Shown here one piece after another: positions 5,958 through 63,001 of a stretch of 63,512 nt of DNA. How positions within the stretch are numbered: the first letter of the stretch is position 1; each line of letters begins with the position of its first letter. The notes beneath the pieces were generated by a model. The model saw only the letters and a program-made list of their open reading frames with translations. It was not told where the DNA came from and made no database searches. The DNA is from Gekko japonicus. Its lineage: Eukaryota. The translations under genes and the position numbers were made by a program. The stretch spans positions 396,687 through 460,198 of the forward strand of contig NW_015167580.1 of NCBI RefSeq assembly GCF_001447785.1. Reading direction: 5' to 3'.

Positions 5958-7326
5958 CTCTTCTTATAGTCTTATGTTCTTAATATTGGCCTACCTTCCA
6001 GGGTTCAAGCAGTTTGAATCCTTTTTACCTCTTTGCTCAAAAATACAAACAAGATTTAGTATCATTAATTTAAAAACATCACCGCGGCAGTAGCTACCCC
6101 CACTGGACAGCGGCACCAGTGCCTAAGAAGACCCCCAAGTTGATGGTGGGAGGTGGTGGCAATGGGTACAGAGGAGCAAGCAGCGGAACATCGATGGACA
6201 AACACACAAAATAAAGGGAGGATTGTCAGGCCAAGATTAAATTGACATTACATGCAAAGACAGAAATCGGGATGGGAAAGCTTTGAAAACATTTTTCCCT
6301 GTAATGCTTTGGTGGACAAATTGGGGTGGGGGCATTTTGACAATCTCCGTAAGCCTAGCATTACAATGATACCTCCTTGTTTTAAATTCTGAAAACTCAT
6401 TGGATGCCCCCCTCCCACATCACGTGACCTTTCAACCCTAACTGAGGAAAACTGTGATTCTTGATTGTATGTGCAAAATAGATGCACAGAATACACCAGA
6501 GGAAGAACAATGGTATGAACAGAAGGCAAAATACATCCAAAATCAAGTTTAAAGTCTTGACTGCTGGGATTCTCCTCAGTAAGATGTGAGTGCAGGAAGG
6601 GCCTTGGTCTCCAGTTGAAGTCAAGACTTTTCAAGAGAGGGCACAACCAAACAAAGAGAGAATCATGGAAACAGCTATCACAAATAAGAAAAACTTTTCC
6701 AGACTAACTAATAATAATTACTTCCAAATGCATTTTGGTAATTTTATATAATTTCCACTTAAATACTGCAAAACATGCCAAGTTATTCAGTGTGTAGTAT
6801 AGAAAAATACGATCTCAATTTGGTATTAATTCAAAAAGATTCACTCAGTAGTGTTAAGTCCTGATTTCAAAAATTGATAAAAGGGAAGAGTCTCCTAAGG
6901 AGTATGGGATACATTCAGTATACACAAATCGTAGCAACTTACATCTATGGTAATTTCAGTATGCATTATTTGATCCCTACACAATTTAAACTAATACATG
7001 CCGATTAAAGTGGCCTGGGGGGGGGTGTTTATGTTGTGCGTGTGGCACATATTCGGATGGATAAAACAGAACCATTCCACTGGCAGAAGGTANNNNNNNN
7101 NNNNNNNNNNNNNNNNNNNNNNNNNNNNNNNNNNNNNNNNAATTACTAGGATGCAATCTTATATCTTTATTGCACCTTATCTCCCTTCCCAGGAAAGAAG
7201 GACTGAAACAAAGTAACTCAATCCCAGTCTGCCACAGCCCAAAGACACAACCCTTTTGTGGTCAGGGTGACGCATCACTCACCCAAGAATGGCACATCCT
7301 GCCTTTAAGTGTCCCTTTCATCAATA

Positions 7327-38162: not shown

Positions 38163-40515
38163 TGAGTTAAGTGAAGGCAGGACAGAGCATGTGCTCAAGT
38201 GTAATAGTTGTTTCCCCAAGAAGATCTTACCAGCCACCTGATCCAATTTCAGCTCTGCATATGCATCTTGGCACTGAGTGGCCCCTCCTGACGGCTGCCC
38301 CCACCCTCTTTTTTCCTGTAAGTAACCGTTGAGGAGATTTTATTCCAATTTGTCTGAAGAAGTGTGCTTTGCACATGAAAGCTGACACTTTGAAGAAGAC
38401 TTTGTTGGTCTTAAAGGTGCCAACTGGTCTCCAACTCTGTTCTCTAGCACAAATTGTTGCAACATTAGAGAGGGAGGGGGAGCACACAAACTTCAACCAT
38501 CTTGAAAAGGAAAAGGAAAGCACAGTGAAATACTTGGGGCGTTGCGACAGACAGAGACGGATTTCTCTAAGTCCTAAGTGGAACACGATAGGCTGCAAAC
38601 ATGGTCATGTGACAGGAAGAGGGGGAACCAGAGTTGTGACAGGACAGTGGGCAGCTGACTATGAAAGCTGAGGAGGATGGGTGATACAAGCAGTGCATAG
38701 GGAGGTGTACTATAGTAAGGAAGAAGCTGAGGATTAAAGGCAGGAAGGCATTCACTCTGCCCCTCAGCAACTTTGCCTCAGTATCCTGGTGATTTTCTGA
38801 GTATGCTTGCAATGAGAATCAGGAGGCATGGCACCCTTTGTCTCCACATAGCTATCAGAAATAAACCCAGCAAATCCAAGTATCCCACCGGCGTAATCTG
38901 CGGGGGGGCTGAGGGGCTTGCGCCCCCCCCCCGAAATTTCCCCAGAAGCCCCGCCCACCCACTGCGAAGCAAGCTGCCCGGCCCCAGCCCCGCCGAGAGC
39001 GGCCCTGCGGCCGCCATGGGAACAAGTGTGTGTCGCGGGACGCGGCGGAGGGGCACCTGCTGGGCTGCGCCAGGGCACACCGAGCCAGCGCGGGTCACCG
39101 CGGACGGGGACTTGTGTGACTCGGCGCGGCGGCGGCCGCTCCAGGCCCGTGCACGACCCTTGGCTTGGGTGCGTGCGCACCTTCTGGGGCCCAGAGAGCC
39201 TCCGGCGCGACCTGGCTGCCTTGGCCGCGCAGCGGGACTCCTGCTGGGGAGCGCGGAGTGGCTGGGGGCAGTCCGGGCCCGCGCAGGCGACGCCGCTCCG
39301 CCTCCAGGGGTGTGGACGTCCAGCGGCGACTCCGACGGGCTGCGGTCATGCACACTTGCTTCTCGTCTATCTGCTGCTCGGGCGGCTCTCAGGGGTTTCC
39401 TCACCTGGCAACAGCCGGGTCAGCGCCCAGGCCTTTTTCTCATTGGCTGCCTCTGCGCCGCTCTCCTCCCTCACCCACCGCGGCCAGGACCGAGCTCAGT
39501 CGTGCGCCTCTGCCAGCCCCGTCGGTGTCCCCATTGCTGCCTGGCCCTCCCTCCCCATTGGACGCGTCCCGCCTTGGAGATGGCAACAGGAATGGGGGGC
39601 CTGGCCGGGAACCTGTGGCTGCTGTTGCCCTTCCTGGGGGGCCGCCTAGTGACAGATAAGTGCCTCCCCCCCCCCGCCCAGGTGCCTGAGGGCGATGGTG
39701 CAGCCTGGCGGGAGGGGGGAGTTGGAAGGAGGAACGACTCGGCAGGAAGAGAGGCTGGAAGGAATGGGTTTATTTGGGGGCGGGGAGGGCAGGGCTCATA
39801 AGAACATCAGAGAAGCCGGTGTTGGATCAGGCCAACGGCCCATCCAGTCCAACACTCTGTGCCACACAGTGGCCAGAAATACCAGGGGCCATCAGGAGGT
39901 CCAGCAGTGGGGCCAGGACACTAGANNNNNNNNNNNNNNNNNNNNNNNNNNNNNNNNNNNNNNNNNNNNNNNNNNNNNNNNNNNNNNNNNNNNNNNNNNN
40001 NNNNNNNNNNNNNNNNNNNNNNNNNNNNNNNNNNNNNNNNNNNNNNNNNNNNNNNNNNNNNNNNNNNNNNNNNNNNNNNNNNNNNNNNNNNNNNNNNNNN
40101 NNNNNNNNNNNNNNNNNNNNNNNNNNNNNNNNNNNNNNNNNNNNNNNNNNNNNNNNNNNNNNNNNNNNNNNNNNNNNNNNNNNNNNNNNNNNNNNNNNNN
40201 NNNNNNNNNNNNNNNNNNNNNNNNNNNNNNNNNNNNNNNNNNNNNNNNNNNNNNNNNNNNNNNNNNNNNNNNNNNNNNAGGCGCGGAGCTCTCTCTCTCC
40301 CTCCCCTTCCTCCCTCTCTCTCTCTCTCTGAAAGAGCTGTGACTGACCCAAGGTCACCCAGCTCACTTTTGAACACCTTTTTAAAAATTGTGTGTGTGTT
40401 ACCCTCACAACAACCCTGTGGGGTAGGTTAGGTAGAGAGGGGGAGATTTGGCCCGGGGTCACTCAGCCAGCAGAGTGAGAATACACTCTGCTGGTTGAGT
40501 GACCCCGGGCCAAAT

Positions 40516-41889: not shown

Positions 41890-42358
41890 ATGTCCTGGGC
41901 TCCCATGCTCAGCCTTCTAGCCTTGTGGTGCACAGGTGAGAGTACAACAAATATACCTAGAAACATTGCTAAGAGAAATGCAGCTGAGAAGCAGCGTGAA
42001 TATGACGGTTTCTGCAATATTAATTTTTTTTGCAGGTTTGAGCTGCCAGGAAGTGATCTCTCAGCCACCCTCAGCTTCCATTTCAGCAGGGAACACAGCG
42101 AAGCTCTCCTGTGCCATGAGCAGAGGGTCCAGCATCAGTGGCTACTATGTGCTCTGGGTCCAGCAGAAGCCTGGGAATCCCCCACGATTCCTCTTCCAGT
42201 ATAAGTCAGATTCCGACAAGTACCAGGGCTCTGGGGTGCCCTCTCGATTTTCTAGTTCCAAAGATACATCCAGCAACACCGGCTATTTAAACATCGCAGG
42301 AGCCTCGGCTGAAGACGAGGCCGATTATTACTGTGCAGTGTGGCACAACAGTGCTTAT
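41890..42358 (+). CDS. IGLV segment V9 (IGLV5-like WHNSA type), apparently functional
   Basis: Leader 41890-41935, intron 41936-42035, V ends CAVWHNSAY with no stop. RSS CACGGTG 42359-42365 / 23 / ACAAAAACC 42389-42397. Confidence 0.93.
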
Positions 42359-42715
42359 CACGGTGACTCAAACAGAAGGGGAAGCTGGACAAAAACCTCT
42401 CATATTCCCTAAGGGGAGCTAAACTGCATATCTTTGTGGTACAGGGGCACCGTCTGACTAATAAAAAAACATTAGATAGTATGAGTAAGTACATGTTATC
42501 ATGAACACAGGAGTCACAGTAAACTTATTCCCTTTTGCATTGACCTTTTCCCCCAATCATCCCCCGTTAGATCAATACGGAAGTGGCAAGATCCCAACCA
42601 GTGCTGTGCAATCCCAGCAAAACTTTGGTTGCCATTGAAGCCTATTGTAGTATTAAGCTTTCAGATCTCCGGTTGTACCTTTAGCTTCTCTGGCAACAGA
42701 GCACTGAATGACTTA

Positions 42716-45796: not shown

Positions 45797-47409
45797 CACA
45801 GTGACTCAGTCAGATGGGGAAGCCAGACAAAAACCTCGTCTATTCCCTACAGGGAGCTGAACTACACATGTTTATAATGCAGAGACAACATCAGACTAAT
45901 GAAACCATTTGACACAAAATAAGAGTAAACTCAGATTACTTGTCTATTGGTACCTGATAAAAGGAGCTTTGACTCTTGAAATCTCAGATCACGAAAATCT
46001 TGTTGGTTCTAAGGTACTACTGGACCTACATCCAGCTCTTCTGCTACAGAGCAGCATGTCTACTCTCTGAAAATATGTACATACAGTCACATTAAACTTG
46101 TTCCTATTGGTGTGGTCTTTCCCACAAATATACTATTAGATCTACATGGAAACTGATGGTAGGTAGATGCTGGAGTCAGTCCATAAAGCAATCCCAACAA
46201 AGCTTTGTTTCTGGTATAATTAATTACTGAGAACCTTTTTAATGTTATCCAAAGAGCAAGAGTCCAGGAGCACCTTAAAGACTAACAAAATATGTGGCAG
46301 GGAAGGAGCTTTTGCGAGTCACTGCTCACTTCTTCAGATAATGTTATCTGAAGTCATATTTCTCCTGAATTCAGGGTTTCCATTCCTAGAGCCTGATTAA
46401 GCATTTATTTAAGCTCTCAGACTGCTTTCCCCCCACCAATTTCAATGCATTCATATGAACAACATAAAGGGACAATTCTGAAGTGCTATGTTAGGAGTCA
46501 TAAGTATGCAGACCAATTATTCTGGACTGAGAGAAAGAATCAGTATGTCTTTAGTATATGGTCTCTTAGCTTCTATCAGTAGTTCCATGCAGTGTTGTTG
46601 TTGTTGTTTTTTAAATAATATATAGCATTTGTACATGTTTGGTGAACCAAATTCTTTCATCATCCAAGATCTATGCTTAATGGCTACTCTTAAAACCCTA
46701 GGGAGCCACTTCCCCAATAGGGGCCACTCTAACCTGAGGGTCCCTTCCTGCTGGGGCCACCCCAGCCTGAAGAGAACGGTGGATGTGATCCCCCACCATC
46801 CTGAGCTGGAGTCACAGAAAAGGAGGTGCTTGGCTCAGACCACCATGCCCACTGTGGGGCCACTTCTGGCCTTGCCTTGATGAGGGATGCACCTGGACAG
46901 CCCGCCCTTACCGTGTGGCCAGCCTGGGGCCCAGCCTGATATCGCTAAGGGACATAAATCTTGCCTGGATTCACCACCATGAGGGACCTGAGCCCAGCTT
47001 GGCCTTGCCTCATTAAGGGACCTGCACCTTATATGTGCGTGCTGGGTGGTGATGCCCCTTTTTCAGGGGCATTTCCCCTTCCCCACCTTCCCTGAACAGA
47101 ACTCAAATGAGGTCTGTGGGTGAGAGCAGTTTCTTTCCTCAGATTTACGCCAATAATTCAATTGGAAGAGATGCTCTGAAGGGAATCCTCACTAGTACAT
47201 ATCTCTAAAAGCTTCCTCAAGTAGAGAAGCAGTGTTACAAATACTCTAAAACGAATAACCAAATGACATGAAATCATGGTATGTATGATTGTGGTAACTG
47301 CAATTATGACCACTAGAGGATGTCCTTGATGTACCGTGCTGCAGATAATCAAATTTGGTTTCTCTAGTCAAAAGGGGAAGGAGCACAGGTGGTAGTTAAT
47401 GTTCCAGTT

Positions 47410-50640: not shown

Positions 50641-51196
50641 CCCAGTGACTCAGTCAGATGGGGAAGCCAGACAAAAACCTCCTCTGGTCCCTAAGGGAAA
50701 CTGCTGAACTGGAGATGTATATAATGCAGAGACACCATTGGCCTAATGCAACCATTAGGAATAAAAGTAAGGCTGAGGACGGACTGGCAGTATGAAGCAC
50801 AAGGGAGGCGGGGCAAAAAGACTTGGACCAAGTTGTGCCGGGGATTCCCTGGTCGCACTGCACCTACTGATGCGGGAGCATACTGGGGAGGAGTTATAAG
50901 GGAGAGTTCACACTGTTGGCCCACCCCTGGCGGAGGCACAGCTGTAAGCAGCTTTTTTCCTCACTCCAGCGACATGCGTCTATACATGGGCACATAGGCG
51001 CAGCACCGCAGCAATGTGGCTTGTTTGCAGCTTTTAGCATGCACACTTCCGGGAAGTGGGATCAACATGCTCTCCAGGGTTTGCTACGGCTTTCACCTGG
51101 TACTTTTTTTAACATGGTAGGGAATCATCATAGGACGGGTTGAGTATGGCTGGAGAATGCCTGAACGCTGTGGCTGTGTGAACCGGCCCCTTTAAT

Positions 51197-51633
51197 TTTT
51201 TTTTCTTTTTGTTTATTTAGGTGCACCGTTCCTGGAGGTACTGCAATACCAGGTCGATGCATGGAGTGGATGGAGCAAGCCCCTATCCATCTCCCAGTCC
51301 CAAAAATGCATTTAATATATAGTCCTCAGATAGAGGATGTATCAGATATTAAACTGATAAGAACAGATTGACTTTTATTTAGAGAATGTTTACATTACAA
51401 TCACTGATGTCATGTAGCAAATACAAGCAAGCTCCGGAAAACGCAGGTGCATGCATGTCATATGAAAAACAATAAACAGGCTTAGTACGTGATACTTTGG
51501 CATGCACTGTGCATCCCGTGACTCGGGGGTGGCTGAGGGTTTGTAGTATAATAGTCCATGGCAGGAGAGCAGGGCAAAGTCCTGGTCTCCCCATTACTAC
51601 ACTTGATCTTAGCCAAAAGGCCGAGAAGCGATA
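51197..51633 (-). pseudogene. RNU2: U2 snRNA retropseudogene interrupted at nt 37/38
   Basis: Reverse complement of 51595-51632 = ATCGCTTCTCGGCCTTTTGGCTAAGATCAAGTGTAGTA (U2 1-38). Reverse complement of 51220-51368 = ATCTGTTCTTATCAG...CCAGGAACGGTGCACC (rest of U2). A-rich tail 51197-51219. 17-bp TSD GAACCGGCCCCTTTAAT at 51180-51196 and 51634-51650. Confidence 0.93.
51369..51594 (-). mobile_element. Putative 5'-truncated U2-targeting non-LTR retrotransposon (Utopia- or Keno-type) 3' end
   Basis: 226 bp inserted exactly after U2 GTGTAGT(A). It ends AATAAAAGTCA directly before the U2 continuation. The family is inferred from the target site only. Confidence 0.6.
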
Positions 51634-53549
51634 GAACCGGCCCCTTTAATCCGTTTGTGAAACGTGCCTACATCGGGCCAAACTGCCAGTCTGAACTCAG
51701 CCTAAGATTATGTTCACATCACAATGCAATATCACTTTAAACCTTTCCCTATAAGCCTTGCCCTACTGGAAGTGAGCTTTTTCCTCATTAATTTCATGTT
51801 GGATCTTAGTGGGATATGAACATAGGTGGAGCCTAAGAGATACTGGTGTTATAGACTAAAGGAATCCCAGCAAGATGTTATCCTTGTTTCTTTTTGAGAT
51901 CCTTGGCTGCTTTACATCCAGGGCTTCCATTTCAGTCCATGCCTACTTAAGCATCTGGCTCTCTGGCAGCTTTTCCCCTCCCATTTCAGTGCATTCTTAT
52001 GAATTACAAAAGTGGAGAGGGACTCTCAGGATTATACAGTCCAATTACTCTGTATTAAAAGACAAAAAATGTTTCATTATTATATAATCTTTTGGTATAA
52101 TCAGTATAATCTCCATTCGCAAAACCTAAGCAAAACCGTTAACAATGGGAAATTTTGGAGGTCGTTAAATTATAGGGTCTCCATAAGACAGAAGTGGCTT
52201 GACAGGACTGAAAACACACAAGGCCTAGGGAGCCACTTCCCCAATAGTGGCCACTCTGAGGGTAACCCCCCCCCTCGCTCGGGCCACCCCAGCCCAAAGA
52301 GAACAGTGGATGTTTCCCCCACCCACCCCCCATCCTGAGCTGGAGTCACAGCAATTGAGGTGCTGGGCTCAGACCCACCATGCCCACTGCGGGGCCAGCT
52401 CTGGCCTTGCCATGGTGAGGGATGCACCTGGCCAGCCCGGCCTTACCATGTGGCCAGCCTGGCCTCACTGCAATGAGAGGTGTGTGCTCGGCCTGGTGTC
52501 GCCATGACAAGGGATGCGCTCCAGACTTGGCCTCACCTCAGTGAGGGACTCTCTTCTGGCCCAGCCTGATATCACTAAGGGACATAAATCTTGCCTGGAT
52601 TCACCACCATGAGGGACCTGAGCCCTGCCCGGCCTTGCCTCAGTCAGGGACCTGCACCTGGTATGTGCGTGCTGGATGCTGAGGCCCCTTTTTCAGGGCC
52701 ATTTTTCCTTCCCCACCATCCCTGAAGAGAGCTCAAATGAGGTCTGTGGGCGAGAGCAGTTTCTTGCCTCAGATTTATGCCTATAATTCGATTGGAAGAG
52801 GTGCTCTGAAGGGAATCCTCACTACTACATGTCTCTAAAAGCTGCCTTGAATAGGAAAGCAGTATTACAAACAAAATGGGGGGGTGGGAATGCTATGAGA
52901 TCATGGTATGGATAATTATGGTGACTGCAGTTATGACCACTAGAGGATGCTCTTGATGTACCATGCTGCAGATGATCAAATTTGCTTTCTCTAGTCATGA
53001 AGGGAAGGAGCACAGGTGGTGGGTAATGTTCCAGCTCAATGCTTTGTTCGTTGTTGTTGTTGTTTTCTCTAGGCAGAGGTATGTGGACTGAAACAGACCC
53101 TACGGGGCACAAATTGTTTCAGCACTGGAGGGGGGTGGGTACACAGACTTCAGCTAAAAAGGAAATGTTCGATGATAGACCCAGGACACTGTTGCAAGTA
53201 TAGGCAGATAAATTCATCCAGAGCACCAGAAGCTTTGAAAAACAGGGGGGAAAGTGGCTCCCATATGCCAATTCATCAGCAGTTAAGTCCAGTGAGACAA
53301 CAAGAACACAAACTATTCAATTACCACACCCATCAATTACCAGTCCATTTGTCTTTTTAGGTCAATATGATCTGCTCAGAATGATGGCAGCTCTGCTGTG
53401 TCTTATGCAGAAGTCCTCCCATCATCAGCTGTCTGATGCTACTCAGTGGAGGGTCCAGGGCTTGAAACTGGTCTGGGAGCTTCCACATTCCCAGTAGATG
53501 CTCCATCACTGAGCCACAGCCCCATTCCAAGCTTTAATGATCAACTGTA

Positions 53550-54253: not shown

Positions 54254-54707
54254 ATGTTCTGGCCACGCATTCTCAGCCTTCTCGTCATATGGTGCACAGG
54301 TGAGAGAAGACTAAAACATGGCTGAGTGGAATGCAGCTCAGAAGCAGCACATATGTGACAGTTTCTGTGATTTTTTTTTTCCAGGTCTGAACTCCCAGCA
54401 AGTGATATCTCAGCCACCCTCAGCATCTGTTTCACCTGGGAGCACAGTGAAGTTCTCCTGTGTCATGAGCAGTGGGCTCAGCATCAGTAGCTATCATGTG
54501 TCCTGGTACCAGCAGAAGCCAGGGAATCCTCCAAGATACCTCTTACGCTATTATTCAGATTCCAACAAACACCAAGGCTCTGGAGTTCCTTCTCGATTTT
54601 CCGGTTCCAAAGATACCTCCAGCAACACCTGCTATTTAAATGTTGCAGGAGCCTCGGCTGAAGACGAGGCTGTTTATTACTGTGCAACCTGGCACAGCAG
54701 TGCTTGG
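54254..54707 (+). CDS. IGLV segment V13, apparently functional
   Basis: Leader 54254-54299, intron 54300-54384, V ends CATWHSSAW. RSS CACAGTG 54708-54714 / 23 / ACAAAAACC 54738-54746. Confidence 0.93.
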
Positions 54708-56686
54708 CACAGTGACGCAGTCAGATGGGGAAACCAGACAAAAACCTCTTATGTTCCCCAAGGAGAGCTGAACTGCACACATTTATAATGCAGCGAGAAC
54801 ATCAGACTAATAAAGCCAATAGACAATATGAGTAAGTGCATGTTACAATGAACATAAACTTATGCCCTTTGCAGTGCCCATTGCCACAGTTATCCTATAT
54901 TGGATCCATATGGAAATGGCTTCCCAACCAGTATTAGAATCAAATTCTTATGCAAATTTTATCTTCGGTCATTATTGAAGCCCATCGTAGTATTGAGCTT
55001 CCGGCCCTCTGACTGCACCTTTACTTCCTCTAGTATTAGAGCATCAAATCATTTACACATTCACCAATATACCAAGCAAAAAATTAATGTTCTTTTGTCT
55101 TGTACTCAAACATTTTCTCACCTCGTGTTTGGGATGTGTGAACATCACTAACTGTACCACTGAAGTCTCAATTGTGTATTAGCAGGATTGGCCCAGGAGA
55201 TCAAGACCGTGACTGGAAAAAGGATGTGGAGTGCAAATAATAAGCACAAAATAAAGCTTTCATAAACGTATGGGGGGGCAGGTCTTTCATATATGAAATT
55301 GTATGAAACAGGGTTTCACATGCATTTGTGACTTTCTTAATAGTATCTTTTTGTGACTTGGTTGAAATACACTTTATCAAAAAAAGCACACCCTGCTCGA
55401 CACTCCATTGCTTGACACTCATGTACAGAATGTGATCTTACATGTTCGGTGCCCATGAAATTCTCTCTCTTCCTCTGCCACAGATTGTTGTCGTACTGGA
55501 GGGGGGAACACACAGACTTCAACCATTTTAAAAAGAAAAGGAAAACACTCAGGCCGGGTATCGACAGCTAGGTTTGTCTAGCACAGTGGTCCTGAACACT
55601 TTCAGACCAGGTCTTACTCCAGGCCGCAGCATGGGACCCACTAACCTGCAGGTGTATGATGTGACCTCACCATCATTGGAAGAGGGGGAGGCAGACATGT
55701 GACAGGATGGTGGGCAACAGAGCAAGAAAACTGGGGAGGGGGAGAAAAACTACCAGATTGTGCACTATAGTGCGGAACAATCCAAGGCCTAGAGCCGTTC
55801 AGAAATTGTTTCCACCATTACAGGTTGTGGACTGTAATGAGGAACAACTTAAAGGTGGTCTCATTTACCGGGTATTTTTGCTGCTGAGAAAACAAAGTTA
55901 CACATGGAGCCCTTGTTATCGTTGCCAATTAATAGAAGTCCATTAAGGAAATCCTTTCTAAACAGGATAGAGTAGAGATCGGATTCTGAGCTAATCAAAC
56001 CAACTAGGATGAATGGAGATGCAGTAGGCATGTCCTGTTCTCATGGTGCCAAGATGGAGAAGAGTGTGTCAGAGAAGGGGTCTGCCAGGGGGAAGGGTGA
56101 TTTCCTAGGGGTAGCAATCTACATATCAAAAGGATAGCAGCAGAGCAGTATAATGGAAAGATGCTCAGGGTCGTCCCGACCTATCTACCTATGACTGTCT
56201 ATAGTCTGCCTCTGAAGTCTGAGGCTAAGAGCTCAAAGTTCTTCACGACCAACATCAAGTACCACACGTCCCTTCTAACCCATCAATTAGACCTAAGGTG
56301 GTTGAAATGTGGATCTTTTCCAACAATCCAACAACCAAAGTCTTCTGCAATTCACTGGTGTCTCTAAACTTGTGTTCCTTAATACTTATCACAAAGTAGC
56401 AGGACGTGATCAAACATGCCAGGCACTTAACATATTCCCCTCCCTGCAACAATCAACATCTAAGACCAAAGCAGTATATCCAACCCAGTTTCCAGAATAG
56501 AGCCCTCACAAAAAGAGCACATCCTGCCTTTAGGTATCCTCATGACAGGCAGGACCAATCAGATTAGAGCTGATTACCTGAAGGCGGAGCACAGATGTAA
56601 ACAGGGCAGATATAAAGGACTGTCAATGTCAGAACATCCAGTATTGTCAGTTTCCTTTCCTCCTTGGACCTACCAATCTCATCATC

Positions 56687-57151: not shown

Positions 57152-57892
57152 CACAGTGACTCAGTCAGATGGGGAAGCCAGACAAAAACCTCCTCTGGTC
57201 CCTAAGGGAAACTGCTGAACTGGAGATGTATATAATGCAGAGACACCATCGGCCTAATGCAACCATTAGGAATAAAGTAAAGTGGGATTATGTTCATATC
57301 ACAGTGTAATGTCCCAGGAAACCTTTTCCTACTGGAAGTGAGCTTTTTCCACCATTGATCTCATGGGATATGAATATAGGTGGAGCCTAAGAGGTACGGA
57401 TATTAGAGACAAAAGGAATCCCAGCAAGATGTCATTCTTGTTTCTTTTTGAGGTCCTTGGCTGCTTTAGATCCAGGGCCTCCATTTCAGTCCATGCCCGC
57501 TTAACCATCTGGCTCTCTGGCAGCTTTTCCCCTCCCATTTCAGCGCATCAGGGCTGGTCCTGCAATGGGCAGGGGGTTGGACTAGATGGTCTGTATGGCC
57601 CCTGCCAACTCTATGATTCTATGATTCATTCTTATGAATTTCAAAAGTGGAGAGGGACTCTCGGGATCATACAGTCCAATTACTCGGGATCAAAAGAGAG
57701 AGAACGTTTCATCATCATATAATCGTTCAGTACAATCAGCATAATCTCTGTTTGCAAGACCTGAGCGAGACTCTTAACAACAGGAAATTTTGGAGGTCAT
57801 TAATTTATAGGGTCGCCGTAAGTCAGAAGTGGCTCGACAGGACTCAAAACACACAATATTGTGGAAGTTCGAAGTCTGGAAATGGAGACATT

Positions 57893-58998: not shown

Positions 58999-59369
58999 CA
59001 GAGGTCATTTCGGGGGGGGGGGATCGCGGGGGATCGCAGTTCCCCTGGGTGAAGTACANNNNNNNNNNNNNNNNNNNNNNNNNNNNNNNNNNNNNNNNNN
59101 NNNNGGGGCCGTCGCGGGGCTTCCTCGCCCCCCCGCCGGCCTTGCAGGTCCACCGTCGGGCCCCTCATGGGGCTCAGCAGTGGAGCTGCAAGGCCAGCGG
59201 TGGCGGCCGGGACCGTTGGGGGCGGGGTGTGTGGCCTTATGACACATTTCCGGTGATGTCAGGGGGTGTGGCCTTATGACACACTTCCGGTGGTGTCAGG
59301 GGGTGTGGCATATGCTAATGACTTATGCTAATGAGTTCCCCTAGCTCTTTTTCTATGAAATGACCCCTG
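58999..59369. mobile_element. hAT MITE (family B) just upstream of the decayed V leader
   Basis: CAGAGGTCATTT / AAATGACCCCTG, 8-bp TSD ATCTTTGC. Contains an N gap. Confidence 0.88.
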
Positions 59370-60845: not shown

Positions 60846-63001
60846 ACACAGTGATACCATCAAATGGGGAACTGAGAAAAAATCTCTCCCCTGGTGCTCA
60901 GTACGGAACACCCAAGCTTTGCAACATGCAATTTTATCCTTAGGGAACAAATCTATGATCTGGCAGTTTGGTGGCTCAAATGTTTTCTTAGCTGCAAACA
61001 CTTGAGGTGCTCCTTAGGCCACTAATTGGCTCTGAGACTCAACGTCTCCCCCTGCATAATGGGACTAATACGAATGCAGGCCTCACAGGGCAGAAGAATT
61101 TTGAATACTGATGACATGCTGGGTTCTTTAAAAAGGTCTTAACATGAAATATAATATTCTTTTAGCATTGAATGGATCGATTTCTTGCTTTTATCAGCAT
61201 CACTTCTAGAATTAGTTTATTTGCCTTGTATCAATATGAAACACAAAAAATGAATTTGAAGCAGGAAGTTATGTTTCCAGGCATCCCACTTCGGACTCTT
61301 TGACTTTAACATTTCCTGGTGAATTTTGGGATATGATGGCAGCATACAGATGAGCACCTCGCCTTGGGGTGAAAGTGGACAGAATTGAGCACCGACTGAG
61401 CTTTCTCCCAGGAAGTGCTTATGGGGAAAGGAGGAGAGGCACAACCTAAAAGAGAAGGAATATGGATTCCCATCCAAAGAGAAGATGTGCTTCCCTCTTC
61501 CCTGATTTCAGATGTGTTTCTTAAAGTATATTTTATCAAATTTACTACACTTTCTAGAAAATCCATGAAAAACAATTGGAGCAAAAGGCAAACAATTCCT
61601 CTCATTTCCTGCCCACTGTTCCCATCTGGCAGATGTTTTCCAACAAGGTCTGCAATTCCACTGCCCGTAAAAGAAAATTTGGATGAAAGTCTCTGGGCAA
61701 GAGTACTTCCTTTGCTTAGACTCATACAAAGAACTCTGTTGGAGTTCTTCCAAGAATCATCAATATTAATCATCTCTAAGAGCTGGCTAGAGTAGGGAAT
61801 CAGTGTGTAAATATTTTAGATAATTTAATTAAATGTAAGTGGCCAGACCTGAAAACACTCATGATGGAGTGGAAACATCCTAGGTCCTAAATAATTACAG
61901 CAACTGCTGACGAGCAAAGCATCAAGGGTGCCTTGATCTATAAATACTGGAGCTGGCCATATTGGCTTTCTGAGTCAAGTGGTGGAAGGACAGAGCCTAT
62001 GCTCAAGTGCAATGCTTTGTCGTTTCCCCAAGAGGATATGCATTCTCTCTGTCTTTCTCAAGCACAAATTGTTGCAGCATTAGACTGGGGAATGTGCAGT
62101 TTTCAGCCATTTTTAAAAAGGAAGGGGAAATGCAGTGAAAGGCTTAGGGCATTGCTGCAACCAAATATATAGATTTGTCTAACAACGTGGAAAGCCATAA
62201 ACTGCAAACGTGATAATATCACTGTAACATGACAGGAAGACCGGGAACCAGAGTTTTGAGTGGACAATGGGCACCTGACAAAGAAAGCTGGGGATAGGAG
62301 GCACAAGCTGAGCATAGGGAGGTGCGCTGTAGTAAGGAACACGCCAAGGATGAAAAACACGAAGTCATTAACTGTACCACTGAAGGATATTGCCTCACCC
62401 TCTTGCTGCTTTTCTCCGTATGCTTGCAGTGCAAAGTAGGAGAGATGGCACCGTTTGTCTTTGCGTCTGGCACCTGAGCACCAAGAGCTTAGAAAAGCAG
62501 CAAAAAATGCACCCCCACATGTCACCCCAAGCCACAGAGATCAATTCATCAGCAAATGACTCCAGTGAGACAAAAACAATGCAAACTGTTCAAGTCCCAC
62601 ACCCATCACCCCACATGCTACTGCTATTTACTAAATCAGACCACTTGTTTCTTTAGGTCAATACTGTCCGCTCTGAATGGTAGCAGCCCTCCTGTGTCTT
62701 ATATAGAAGCCCTCCCATCATCAGCTATCTGATGCTACTCACTGGAGGGTCCAGGACTTGAAACTGGTCTGGGAACATCTGCATTCCAGGCAGATGCTCC
62801 ACCACTGAGCCACAGCCCCTTCCCAAGATAAACCATCAACTGTACCAACAGTCTAACTGGTCGAAATGTGTGTCTCTTCCAGTATTCTAGTGAAGAGAGG
62901 TCTCTGCTGTGTCCCGATGAGGCTGAGAATGCAGGGCAATTAATTCCTAGTTGCTCGATACAAAGTAGCAAGATATGATCCCGTATGCCCCGTGCTTAAC
63001 A

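What the first reader, a model, noticed from the sequence alone, without database searches (positions are those of the whole stretch)
51180..51650. Chimeric U2 snRNA retrocopy carrying an insert at the Keno/Utopia target site; possible snRNA-based SINE-like parasite
Seen (minus strand): U2 nt 1-38, then 226 bp of non-U2 sequence ending AATAAAAGTCA, then the rest of U2 to its mature 3' end (Sm site retained), an A-rich tail, and a 17-bp TSD around the whole unit. Established: Keno (Tx1 clade) and Utopia non-LTR elements insert into U2 genes about 37-38 nt from the 5' end, and snRNA-headed SINEs (SINEU) are known in crocodilians. Inference: either (a) a U2 gene carrying a truncated Utopia/Keno was transcribed through to the U2 3' end and retroposed by an L1-type enzyme as a U2-insert-U2 unit, which would be a new non-autonomous family if multi-copy, or (b) a plain U2 retrocopy was later hit by the site-specific element. 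A 71-codon ORF starts at the 5' junction and is probably chance.
Basis: partly seen in the sequence, partly recalled or inferred. Interest (0 to 1): 0.82.

Follow-up and report, generated by a model that had tools for sequence, protein, structure and literature searches.

The report
U2 retrocopy split by Utopia fragment
A dead, retro-copied copy of the splicing RNA U2 in a lizard-type genome is interrupted, exactly at the spot that the U2-specific jumping gene Utopia targets, by the last 227 bases of such an element; it is a tidy molecular fossil, and nothing here shows it to be a new mobile family.

Summary
The anatomy is real. On the minus strand there is a 17/17 target-site duplication, U2 nt 1-38, a 227-nt insert, U2 nt 39 to its 3' end with the Sm site, and a 23-nt A-rich tail. 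The insert is the 3' end of a Utopia element, not Keno. Its last 12 nt are identical to the published terminus of alligator Utopia-1_AMi and abut U2 nt 39 as in that paper, and two further blocks are shared upstream. So this is a retrocopy made by a poly(A)-dependent LINE that carries a 5'-truncated Utopia piece.

The order of events is open. I put about 0.48 on a Utopia-disrupted U2 gene being transcribed and its aberrant, adenylated RNA retroposed. I put about 0.40 on a plain U2 retrocopy being hit later.

The SINE-like family idea is untested and unlikely (about 0.06), because U2 promoters lie outside the transcript. The 71-codon ORF has no credible relatives and looks like chance.

The scan index holds only this same stretch, plus an unchecked note of a U2 gene fragment starting at nt 38 elsewhere in this genome. 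This is a new member of a known kind, of moderate interest.

The parts
51634..51650 (-). 5' copy of the 17-bp target-site duplication of the retrocopy
   Evidence: Identical 17-mer at both ends of the unit.
51633..51633 (-). One extra T between the TSD and U2 nt 1. It is either untemplated or a -1 transcription start.
   Evidence: Read directly from the sequence.
51595..51632 (-). U2 snRNA nt 1-38
   Evidence: Exact match found. The Rfam U2 alignment covers model positions 1-38.
51368..51594 (-). 227-nt insert: a 5'-truncated 3' end of a Utopia (RLE-type, U2-targeting) non-LTR retrotransposon, in sense with U2. It has no poly(A) of its own.
   Evidence: The last 12 nt, AATAAAAGTCAA, are identical to the Utopia-1_AMi terminus and abut U2 nt 39. 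A 21-specified-base pattern that fits both termini occurs once in the window and in 0 of 100 shuffles. There is no other copy in the window.
51368..51392 (-). Conserved Utopia 3'-terminal block (TAAACAT..CT..AATAAAAGTCAA)
   Evidence: and the alligator copies in PMC4640811 S1 Fig.
51379..51594 (-). 71-codon ORF that starts at the 5' junction; judged to be chance
   Evidence: Listed. Not in the protein collection, no word-search hit and no Pfam family. The phmmer hits are tandem-repeat translations only. The ORF's last ~20 codons overlap the terminal region, where the ORF translation and my by-hand in-phase translation of the alligator sequence are unalike (by eye, no tool run).
51220..51367 (-). 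U2 snRNA nt 39 to the 3' end, including the Sm site at 51301-51307
   Evidence: Rfam U2 115.9 bits, E 9e-23.
51197..51219 (-). A-rich tail, 23 nt with 19 A. Its first ~9 nt might instead be a genome-encoded 3' extension of the precursor.
   Evidence: Read directly from the sequence.
51180..51196 (-). 3' copy of the 17-bp target-site duplication

Best explanation
Core reading (about 0.9). The unit is a processed pseudogene of U2 snRNA made by a poly(A)-dependent LINE, most likely L1-type. It is interrupted exactly between U2 nt 38 and 39 by the last 227 nt of a Utopia element. Utopia is a restriction-like-endonuclease non-LTR retrotransposon that nicks this site in U2 DNA and copies its RNA in from its 3' end. 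The piece is a 5'-truncated dead copy.

Order of events I commit to (about 0.48, nearly a coin flip against the rival):
1. The truncated Utopia piece first landed in a real U2 gene.
2. That gene's upstream snRNA promoter drove transcription from U2 nt 1 through the 227-nt insert to the normal U2 3' end.
3. The roughly 413-nt aberrant RNA could not mature, was adenylated by snRNA surveillance, and was taken once by a LINE reverse transcriptase.
4. The reverse transcriptase copied it into an AT-rich site in an antigen-receptor V-segment cluster, making the 17-bp TSD.

Shown: the anatomy, the Utopia identity of the terminus, and the retrocopy hallmarks. Inferred: the order of events, the adenylation route, and which LINE did it. 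The copy has no promoter, so it is inert.
For: Anatomy. U2 by Rfam: 115.9 bits and 45.6 bits.

Utopia identity:
- PMC4640811 says Utopia and Keno share the 3' junction at U2 nt 39.
- S1 Fig gives the Utopia-1_AMi terminus ending AATAAAAGTCAA, followed by TCTGTTCTTATCAG.
- The same 12-mer sits at 51368-51379, directly before U2 nt 39, and is the only hit in the window.
- The joint pattern has 1 hit and 0 in 100 shuffles.
- By eye, the block GTATTT..CTAC about 57 nt from the end is also shared.

Retrocopy: the 17/17 TSD, the A-rich tail, the start at U2 nt 1, and no octamer or 3' box.

For this order of events: in human, poly(A)-tailed retrocopies make up 15% of snRNA copies but 0% for U2, and aberrant snRNAs are poly(A)-extended by surveillance and can then be used by L1 (PMC4476161). 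A tailed, full-length U2 copy is therefore more expected from a defective U2 RNA than from normal U2. Nascent and defective snRNAs keep 3' tails that expose them to quality control (PMC12667742).

Unchecked scan notes report a U2 fragment starting at nt 38 with a genomic 3' box elsewhere in this genome (s1-828051), and young L1s in it.
Against: - Nothing in this one locus dates the insert relative to the retrocopy.
- No source U2 gene with this breakpoint was seen.
- The human figure for U2/poly(A) copies may not hold for lizards.
- The paper reports 20-bp TSDs for reptile Utopia. No U2 duplication is present at this insert's 5' junction, so this insertion is atypical under either order.
- Only the last ~57 nt of the insert could be compared with a known Utopia. 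The upstream ~170 nt are assigned by continuity.
- The nick site (bottom strand TTTAAT/CC) is only a loose match to the L1 consensus TTTT/AA.
Confidence: 0.48

Rival explanations
1. Two steps at this locus. A normal, adenylated U2 snRNA was retroposed here first, giving the TSD and tail. Later a Utopia element recognised the intact target sequence in the pseudogene, nicked at nt 38/39 and inserted a 5'-truncated copy.
For: The Utopia endonuclease reads DNA sequence, so pseudogenes with an intact site are legitimate targets. Reptile Utopia are reported to insert at U2-like sequences outside U2 genes. U2 nt 1-66 around the site are fully canonical here. In some genomes most U2 copies are hit, for example 77 disrupted against 15 intact in Nasonia. 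Insertions in pseudogenes are neutral and persist. U2 copies with poly(A) tracts and TSDs have been reported.
Against: It needs two independent rare events at one locus. Full-length poly(A)-tailed U2 retrocopies were 0% of U2 copies in human. Utopia is low-copy and old in the one lizard studied.
Confidence: 0.4
2. The U2-insert-U2 unit is one member of a multi-copy, SINE-like non-autonomous family that is repeatedly retroposed from a master U2 gene carrying the insert.
For: snRNA-headed SINEs with poly(A) tails exist in crocodilians (SINEU, PMC4494074). A master gene with an external snRNA promoter could in principle fire repeatedly.
Against: There is one copy in 63.5 kb and no look-alike in the scan's sequence index, although the operators say a blank there means nothing. 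Retrocopies lose the external promoter, so only the master could breed. No evidence of any second copy was obtained.
Confidence: 0.06
3. The insert was copied into an existing U2 retrocopy by ectopic gene conversion from a Utopia-bearing U2 gene.
For: The U2 flanks on both sides give the homology needed. The paper itself raises recombination and gene conversion among U2 copies.
Against: The 5' homology is only 38 nt. There is no direct evidence, and this needs a Utopia-bearing donor as well as a pre-existing retrocopy.
Confidence: 0.03
4. The chimera arose by template switching of the LINE reverse transcriptase between U2 RNA and another RNA during a single retroposition.
For: snRNA/LINE and snRNA/mRNA chimeras made by template switching are well known.
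Against: It would need two switches: one leaving U2 exactly at nt 39 for the exact 3' terminus of a Utopia RNA, and one returning exactly at nt 38. Both joints coincide with the DNA target site of Utopia, which template switching does not predict.
Confidence: 0.01

Closest known systems
Utopia, reptile branch (Utopia-1_AMi of Alligator mississippiensis; Kojima and Jurka 2015, PMC4640811)
   Same: It inserts in sense into U2 with the 3' junction exactly at nt 39. The terminal 12 nt, AATAAAAGTCAA, are identical, and the blocks TAAACAT and GTATTT..CTAC are shared. It has no poly(A) tail and is 5'-truncated, like most listed crocodilian copies.
   Different: This one is in a lizard-type genome. 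The paper could not determine the termini of the Anolis Utopia. There is no 20-bp U2 duplication at the 5' junction. The middle of the last 60 nt differs by about 12 nt of indels. Only a 227-nt non-coding piece is present, so RT and RLE cannot be checked. The host U2 is a retrocopy, not a gene.
Keno (Tx1 clade, APE-type, U2-specific)
   Same: It has the same 3' junction in U2, according to PMC4640811.
   Different: Keno is reported from frogs, fish, lancelet and hydra. No Keno terminus was available here for comparison. The insert's terminus matches Utopia.
LINE-made snRNA processed pseudogenes with poly(A) (Doucet et al. 2015, PMC4476161)
   Same: A full-length snRNA starting at nt 1, followed by an A-rich tract and flanked by a TSD of variable size.
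   Different: This class was not found for U2 in human. Here the copied RNA, or the copy, carries a site-specific retrotransposon fragment.
SINEU (crocodilian SINEs with U1/U2 heads; Kojima 2015, PMC4494074)
   Same: U2-derived sequence moved by a poly(A)-dependent LINE, with a poly(A) tail.
   Different: SINEU are multi-copy families with their own 3' modules and a target preference for a Mariner element. Here there is a single known copy, a complete U2 on both sides of the insert, and no evidence of a family.
R2 in 28S rDNA: 5'-truncated copies and internally deleted non-autonomous derivatives (own knowledge, not checked here)
   Same: A site-specific RLE element that often leaves short 3'-end copies in its target gene and is co-transcribed with that gene.
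   Different: The target is different. No self-cleaving ribozyme was detected in the insert.

Membership tests
Utopia (U2-targeting RLE non-LTR retrotransposon) | 3' junction exactly before U2 nt 39, element in sense with U2 | tested here: met
   The insert ends at 51368 and U2 nt 39 starts at 51367. The rule comes from PMC4640811.
Utopia (U2-targeting RLE non-LTR retrotransposon) | 3' terminal sequence related to a described Utopia family | tested here: met
   The terminus is 12/12 identical to Utopia-1_AMi, and a 21-base joint pattern gives 1 hit against 0 in 100 shuffles.
Utopia (U2-targeting RLE non-LTR retrotransposon) | Encodes RT and a C-terminal zinc finger plus restriction-like endonuclease | not testable with these tools
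   Only 227 nt are present. The three sense frames give no Pfam family. A full-length element of this genome could not be fetched.
Utopia (U2-targeting RLE non-LTR retrotransposon) | Reptile families: 20-bp duplication of U2 at the insertion | tested here: not met
   U2 nt 38 is followed directly by the insert, and no copy of nt 39-58 lies upstream. Arthropod families make no TSD. This is a family habit, not a defining trait of the lineage.
Keno (Tx1 clade) | Keno-type 3' end and APE endonuclease | not tested
   No Keno sequence was available. The shared target site alone cannot tell Keno from Utopia.
LINE-mediated processed pseudogene (L1-type) | Target-site duplication flanking the whole unit | tested here: met
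   17/17 at 51650-51634 and 51196-51180.
LINE-mediated processed pseudogene (L1-type) | A-rich tail at the 3' end of the copied RNA; 5' end at the transcription start; no promoter or 3' box | tested here: met
   The tail is at 51219-51197 and the unit starts at U2 nt 1, with one extra T. There is no octamer within 500 nt upstream and no 3' box.
LINE-mediated processed pseudogene (L1-type) | Nick site like TTTT/AA | tested here: inconclusive
   The bottom strand reads TTTAAT/CC: AT-rich but not the consensus.
SINE / non-autonomous retroposon family | Many copies with the same internal structure and different TSDs | not testable with these tools
No eukaryote genome search was on hand.
SINE / non-autonomous retroposon family | A promoter carried inside the transcript, so that copies can breed | not tested
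   By established knowledge, U2 genes use an external PSE/DSE, which a retrocopy leaves behind. No octamer lies upstream of this copy.

The most novel reading that the evidence does not exclude
A U2 gene carrying this short Utopia tail acts as a master. Driven by its external snRNA promoter, it keeps making an aberrant, adenylated U2-Utopia-U2 RNA, which poly(A)-dependent LINEs retropose repeatedly. That would found a squamate snRNA-framed non-autonomous family in which a site-specific element's tail rides inside a host snRNA.
Probability: 0.06. Interest if true: 0.75.

Novelty: new member of a known kind. Interest (0 to 1): 0.4.

Why it matters
It shows directly that a squamate Utopia uses the same U2 nt 38/39 site as other Utopia families. 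It also shows that this element keeps the same 12-nt terminus as the alligator family. The 2015 description of Utopia could not establish termini for its one lizard.

Conservation of the terminus between lizards and crocodilians suggests that the reverse transcriptase or the target-primed reaction constrains the element's end.

If the co-retroposition order is right, the locus is also a fossil record of three things: a Utopia-disrupted U2 gene was still transcribed and 3'-processed, its defective RNA was adenylated, and a LINE captured it. That would link snRNA quality control to retrocopy formation.

If the later-hit order is right, it shows that U2 pseudogenes serve as neutral refuges for a parasite of a low-copy gene. 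This bears on the open question in that paper of how Utopia survives on so few targets.

Tried and rejected
No read evidence exists.
- Other copies via ORFs. Five ORFs of the insert region are not in the 15-billion protein collection. The word search found none and Pfam found none.
- Full phmmer search. It gave two hits. Both are translations of tandem repeats. The single-unit match is 15/40, 28.9 bits, and the E-value is inflated by six repeats. Both are singletons, one from a sea slug. I rejected them as spurious.
- The scan's sequence index was blank.
- Ribozyme or structured RNA in the insert. There is no Rfam family beyond chance and the fold z-score is -1.4.
- Formal alignment and shuffle test against the 69-nt alligator terminus. 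I left this out because that stretch has no reference here. I used only the published 12-mer and one short degenerate pattern.
- Template switching was rejected on junction geometry.
- The bacterial promoter scan is irrelevant.
- Dating by CpG decay. The U2 part differs from mammalian U2, as I recall it, at about ten places, four of them at CpG. This rests on memory and on an unknown lizard U2, so I did not use it.

Full report
**Observation**

I read 51000-51800 on the minus strand and located the parts by script. In order:

| Part | Coordinates | Note |
|---|---|---|
| 5' TSD | 51650-51634 | 17-mer ATTAAAGGGGCCGGTTC |
| Extra base | 51633 | one T |
| U2 nt 1-38 | 51632-51595 | |
| Non-U2 insert | 51594-51368 | 227 nt |
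| U2 nt 39 to 3' end | 51367-51220 | Sm site at 51307-51301 |
| A-rich tail | 51219-51197 | 23 nt, 19 of them A |
| 3' TSD | 51196-51180 | same 17-mer |

Rfam calls the 3' part U2 at 115.9 bits (E 9e-23). With permissive filters it calls the 5' 38 nt at 45.6 bits. All conserved positions of nt 1-38 match.

A blastn of the unit against the window finds only itself and its own TSD. No octamer lies within 500 nt upstream and no 3' box lies downstream.

**What the insert is**

Kojima and Jurka 2015 (PMC4640811) describe Utopia, a non-LTR lineage with a restriction-like endonuclease. It inserts into U2 genes so that the downstream U2 starts at nt 39, the same 3' junction as the unrelated Keno.

Their S1 Fig lists alligator Utopia-1_AMi copies whose terminus ends AATAAAAGTCAA. 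In the U2-flanked copies this is followed by TCTGTTCTTATCAG. The same 12-mer is the end of our insert, at 51368-51379, directly before U2 nt 39. It is the only match in the window. As an a priori 12-mer at one fixed position, this is far beyond chance.

A pattern of 21 specified bases that fits both termini (TAAACAT, 0-3 nt, CT, 0-3 nt, AATAAAAGTCAA) has one hit in the window and none in 100 shuffles. By eye, the block GTATTT..CTAC, which opens the alligator's last 69 nt, also opens our last 57 nt. The stretch between differs by about 12 nt of indels.

I conclude that the insert is the 3' end of a reptile-type Utopia, 5'-truncated as most listed crocodilian copies are, and not Keno. Only the last ~57 nt could be compared. 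The upstream ~170 nt are assigned by continuity.

**Other features of the insert**

- The first 110 nt are 55% G+C and the last 117 nt are 35%. The switch coincides with a stop codon in one frame, which may mark the end of the Utopia ORF. This is untested.
- The insert is not significantly structured (z -1.4).
- It has no ribozyme match.

**The 71-codon ORF**

It exists. It is not in the protein collection, has no word-search relative and has no Pfam family.

The exhaustive phmmer search gave two hits. Both are translations of tandem repeats. One repeat unit matches at 15/40, 28.9 bits, and the library E-value comes from summing six units. Both are singletons, one from a sea slug.

The ORF's last ~20 codons overlap the terminal region that is shared with the alligator at the DNA level. 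There the ORF translation and my by-hand translation of the alligator sequence in the matching phase are unalike; no tool was run on that comparison. I read the ORF as chance.

Two sense frames staying open for 67-71 codons is unusual for this composition (0.1% of shuffles). I leave that as an unexplained minor oddity.

**The retrocopy**

The TSD, the A-rich tail, a start at U2 nt 1 and the lack of promoter elements are the marks of a copy made by a poly(A)-dependent LINE. The nick site (bottom strand TTTAAT/CC) is AT-rich but only loosely like the L1 consensus.

Unchecked notes of this scan describe the genome as lizard-type with young L1s, BovB and Penelope.

**Order of events**

Two orders fit the data.

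(a) A truncated Utopia landed in a real U2 gene. The external snRNA promoter drove a roughly 413-nt U2-Utopia-U2 RNA to the normal 3' end. This defective RNA was adenylated by surveillance, and a LINE copied it here.

(b) A normal U2 was retroposed here, and Utopia later hit the intact site in the pseudogene.

For (a):
- In human, poly(A)-tailed retrocopies are 15% of snRNA copies but 0% for U2.
- The same authors argue that aberrant snRNAs, which are poly(A)-extended by surveillance, can be taken by L1 (PMC4476161).
- Defective snRNAs keep 3' tails that expose them to quality control (PMC12667742).
- An unchecked note reports a U2 fragment starting at nt 38 with a genomic 3' box elsewhere in this genome (s1-828051).

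For (b):
- The endonuclease reads DNA, so pseudogenes are valid and neutral targets.
- Reptile Utopia do insert outside U2 genes.
- In some genomes most U2 copies are hit.

A rough rate argument gives comparable expectations for the two orders. It compares the flux of adenylated defective RNA from one disrupted gene with the adenylated fraction of normal U2 multiplied by the chance that a given pseudogene is hit. I put 0.48 on (a) and 0.40 on (b).

Neither order explains why the 20-bp U2 duplication reported for reptile Utopia is missing at this insert.

Template switching is rejected, because both joints coincide with the DNA target site. Gene conversion is possible but unsupported.

**The SINE-like family**

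There is one copy in the window, and the scan's sequence index is blank. U2 promoters lie outside the transcript, so copies cannot breed and only a master gene could. I give the family reading 0.06.

**Comparison with known systems, and novelty**

The closest known are reptile Utopia, LINE-made poly(A) snRNA pseudogenes, and crocodilian SINEU (PMC4494074).

The locus is a new member of known kinds. It adds a squamate Utopia terminus and target site, which the 2015 paper could not determine for Anolis. It also shows that the 12-nt terminus is conserved between a lizard-type genome and alligator.

I found no paper that describes a U2-Utopia-U2 retrocopy. That search covers open-access text only.

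**Verdict**

- Observation: confirmed.
- Interpretation: partly supported.
- Interest: 0.4.

The decisive tests are a genome-wide search for the nt-38/insert breakpoint and a comparison of the orthologous locus in related species.

Noticed in passing
window 41936-42409, 54318-54785, and RSS at 45797-45835, 54708-54746, 57152-57190 (+ strand): There are immunoglobulin V-set exons (Pfam V-set, E 1.5e-16 and 1.6e-18). Three perfect recombination signals, CACAGTG-N23-ACAAAAACC, occur against 0 expected, and there is a degenerate one near 42361-42399. The window lies in an antigen-receptor V-segment cluster with 23-spacer RSS. The U2 unit sits between V segments, antisense to them.
   Followed up: partly
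window 62743-62820 (- strand): A tRNA-like sequence: Rfam tRNA 35.2 bits, and ARAGORN calls tRNA-Ser(GGA). It may be a tRNA gene or the head of a tRNA-derived SINE.
   Followed up: no
window 51368-51594 (- strand): The insert switches from 55% to 35% G+C at about nt 110, exactly at a stop codon in one frame. The other two sense frames stay open for 71 and 67 codons (0.1% of shuffles). This may be the coding/UTR border of the Utopia ORF; it is unexplained otherwise.
   Followed up: partly
window 38764-40462, both strands, around the N run 39926-40278: There is a pile of long overlapping ORFs on both strands, up to 342 aa, with no Pfam family. This is probably a G+C-rich or low-complexity stretch next to an assembly gap. 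The N runs at 7093-7140, 39926-40278 and 59059-59104 were left as they are.
   Followed up: no
proteins P0001 (ENA contig) and P0002 (Elysia crispata KAK3741776.1): The only phmmer hits of the 71-aa ORF are predicted 'proteins' that are translations of tandem repeats of about 77 aa. This is an example of repeat-inflated E-values in the representative library.
   Followed up: yes
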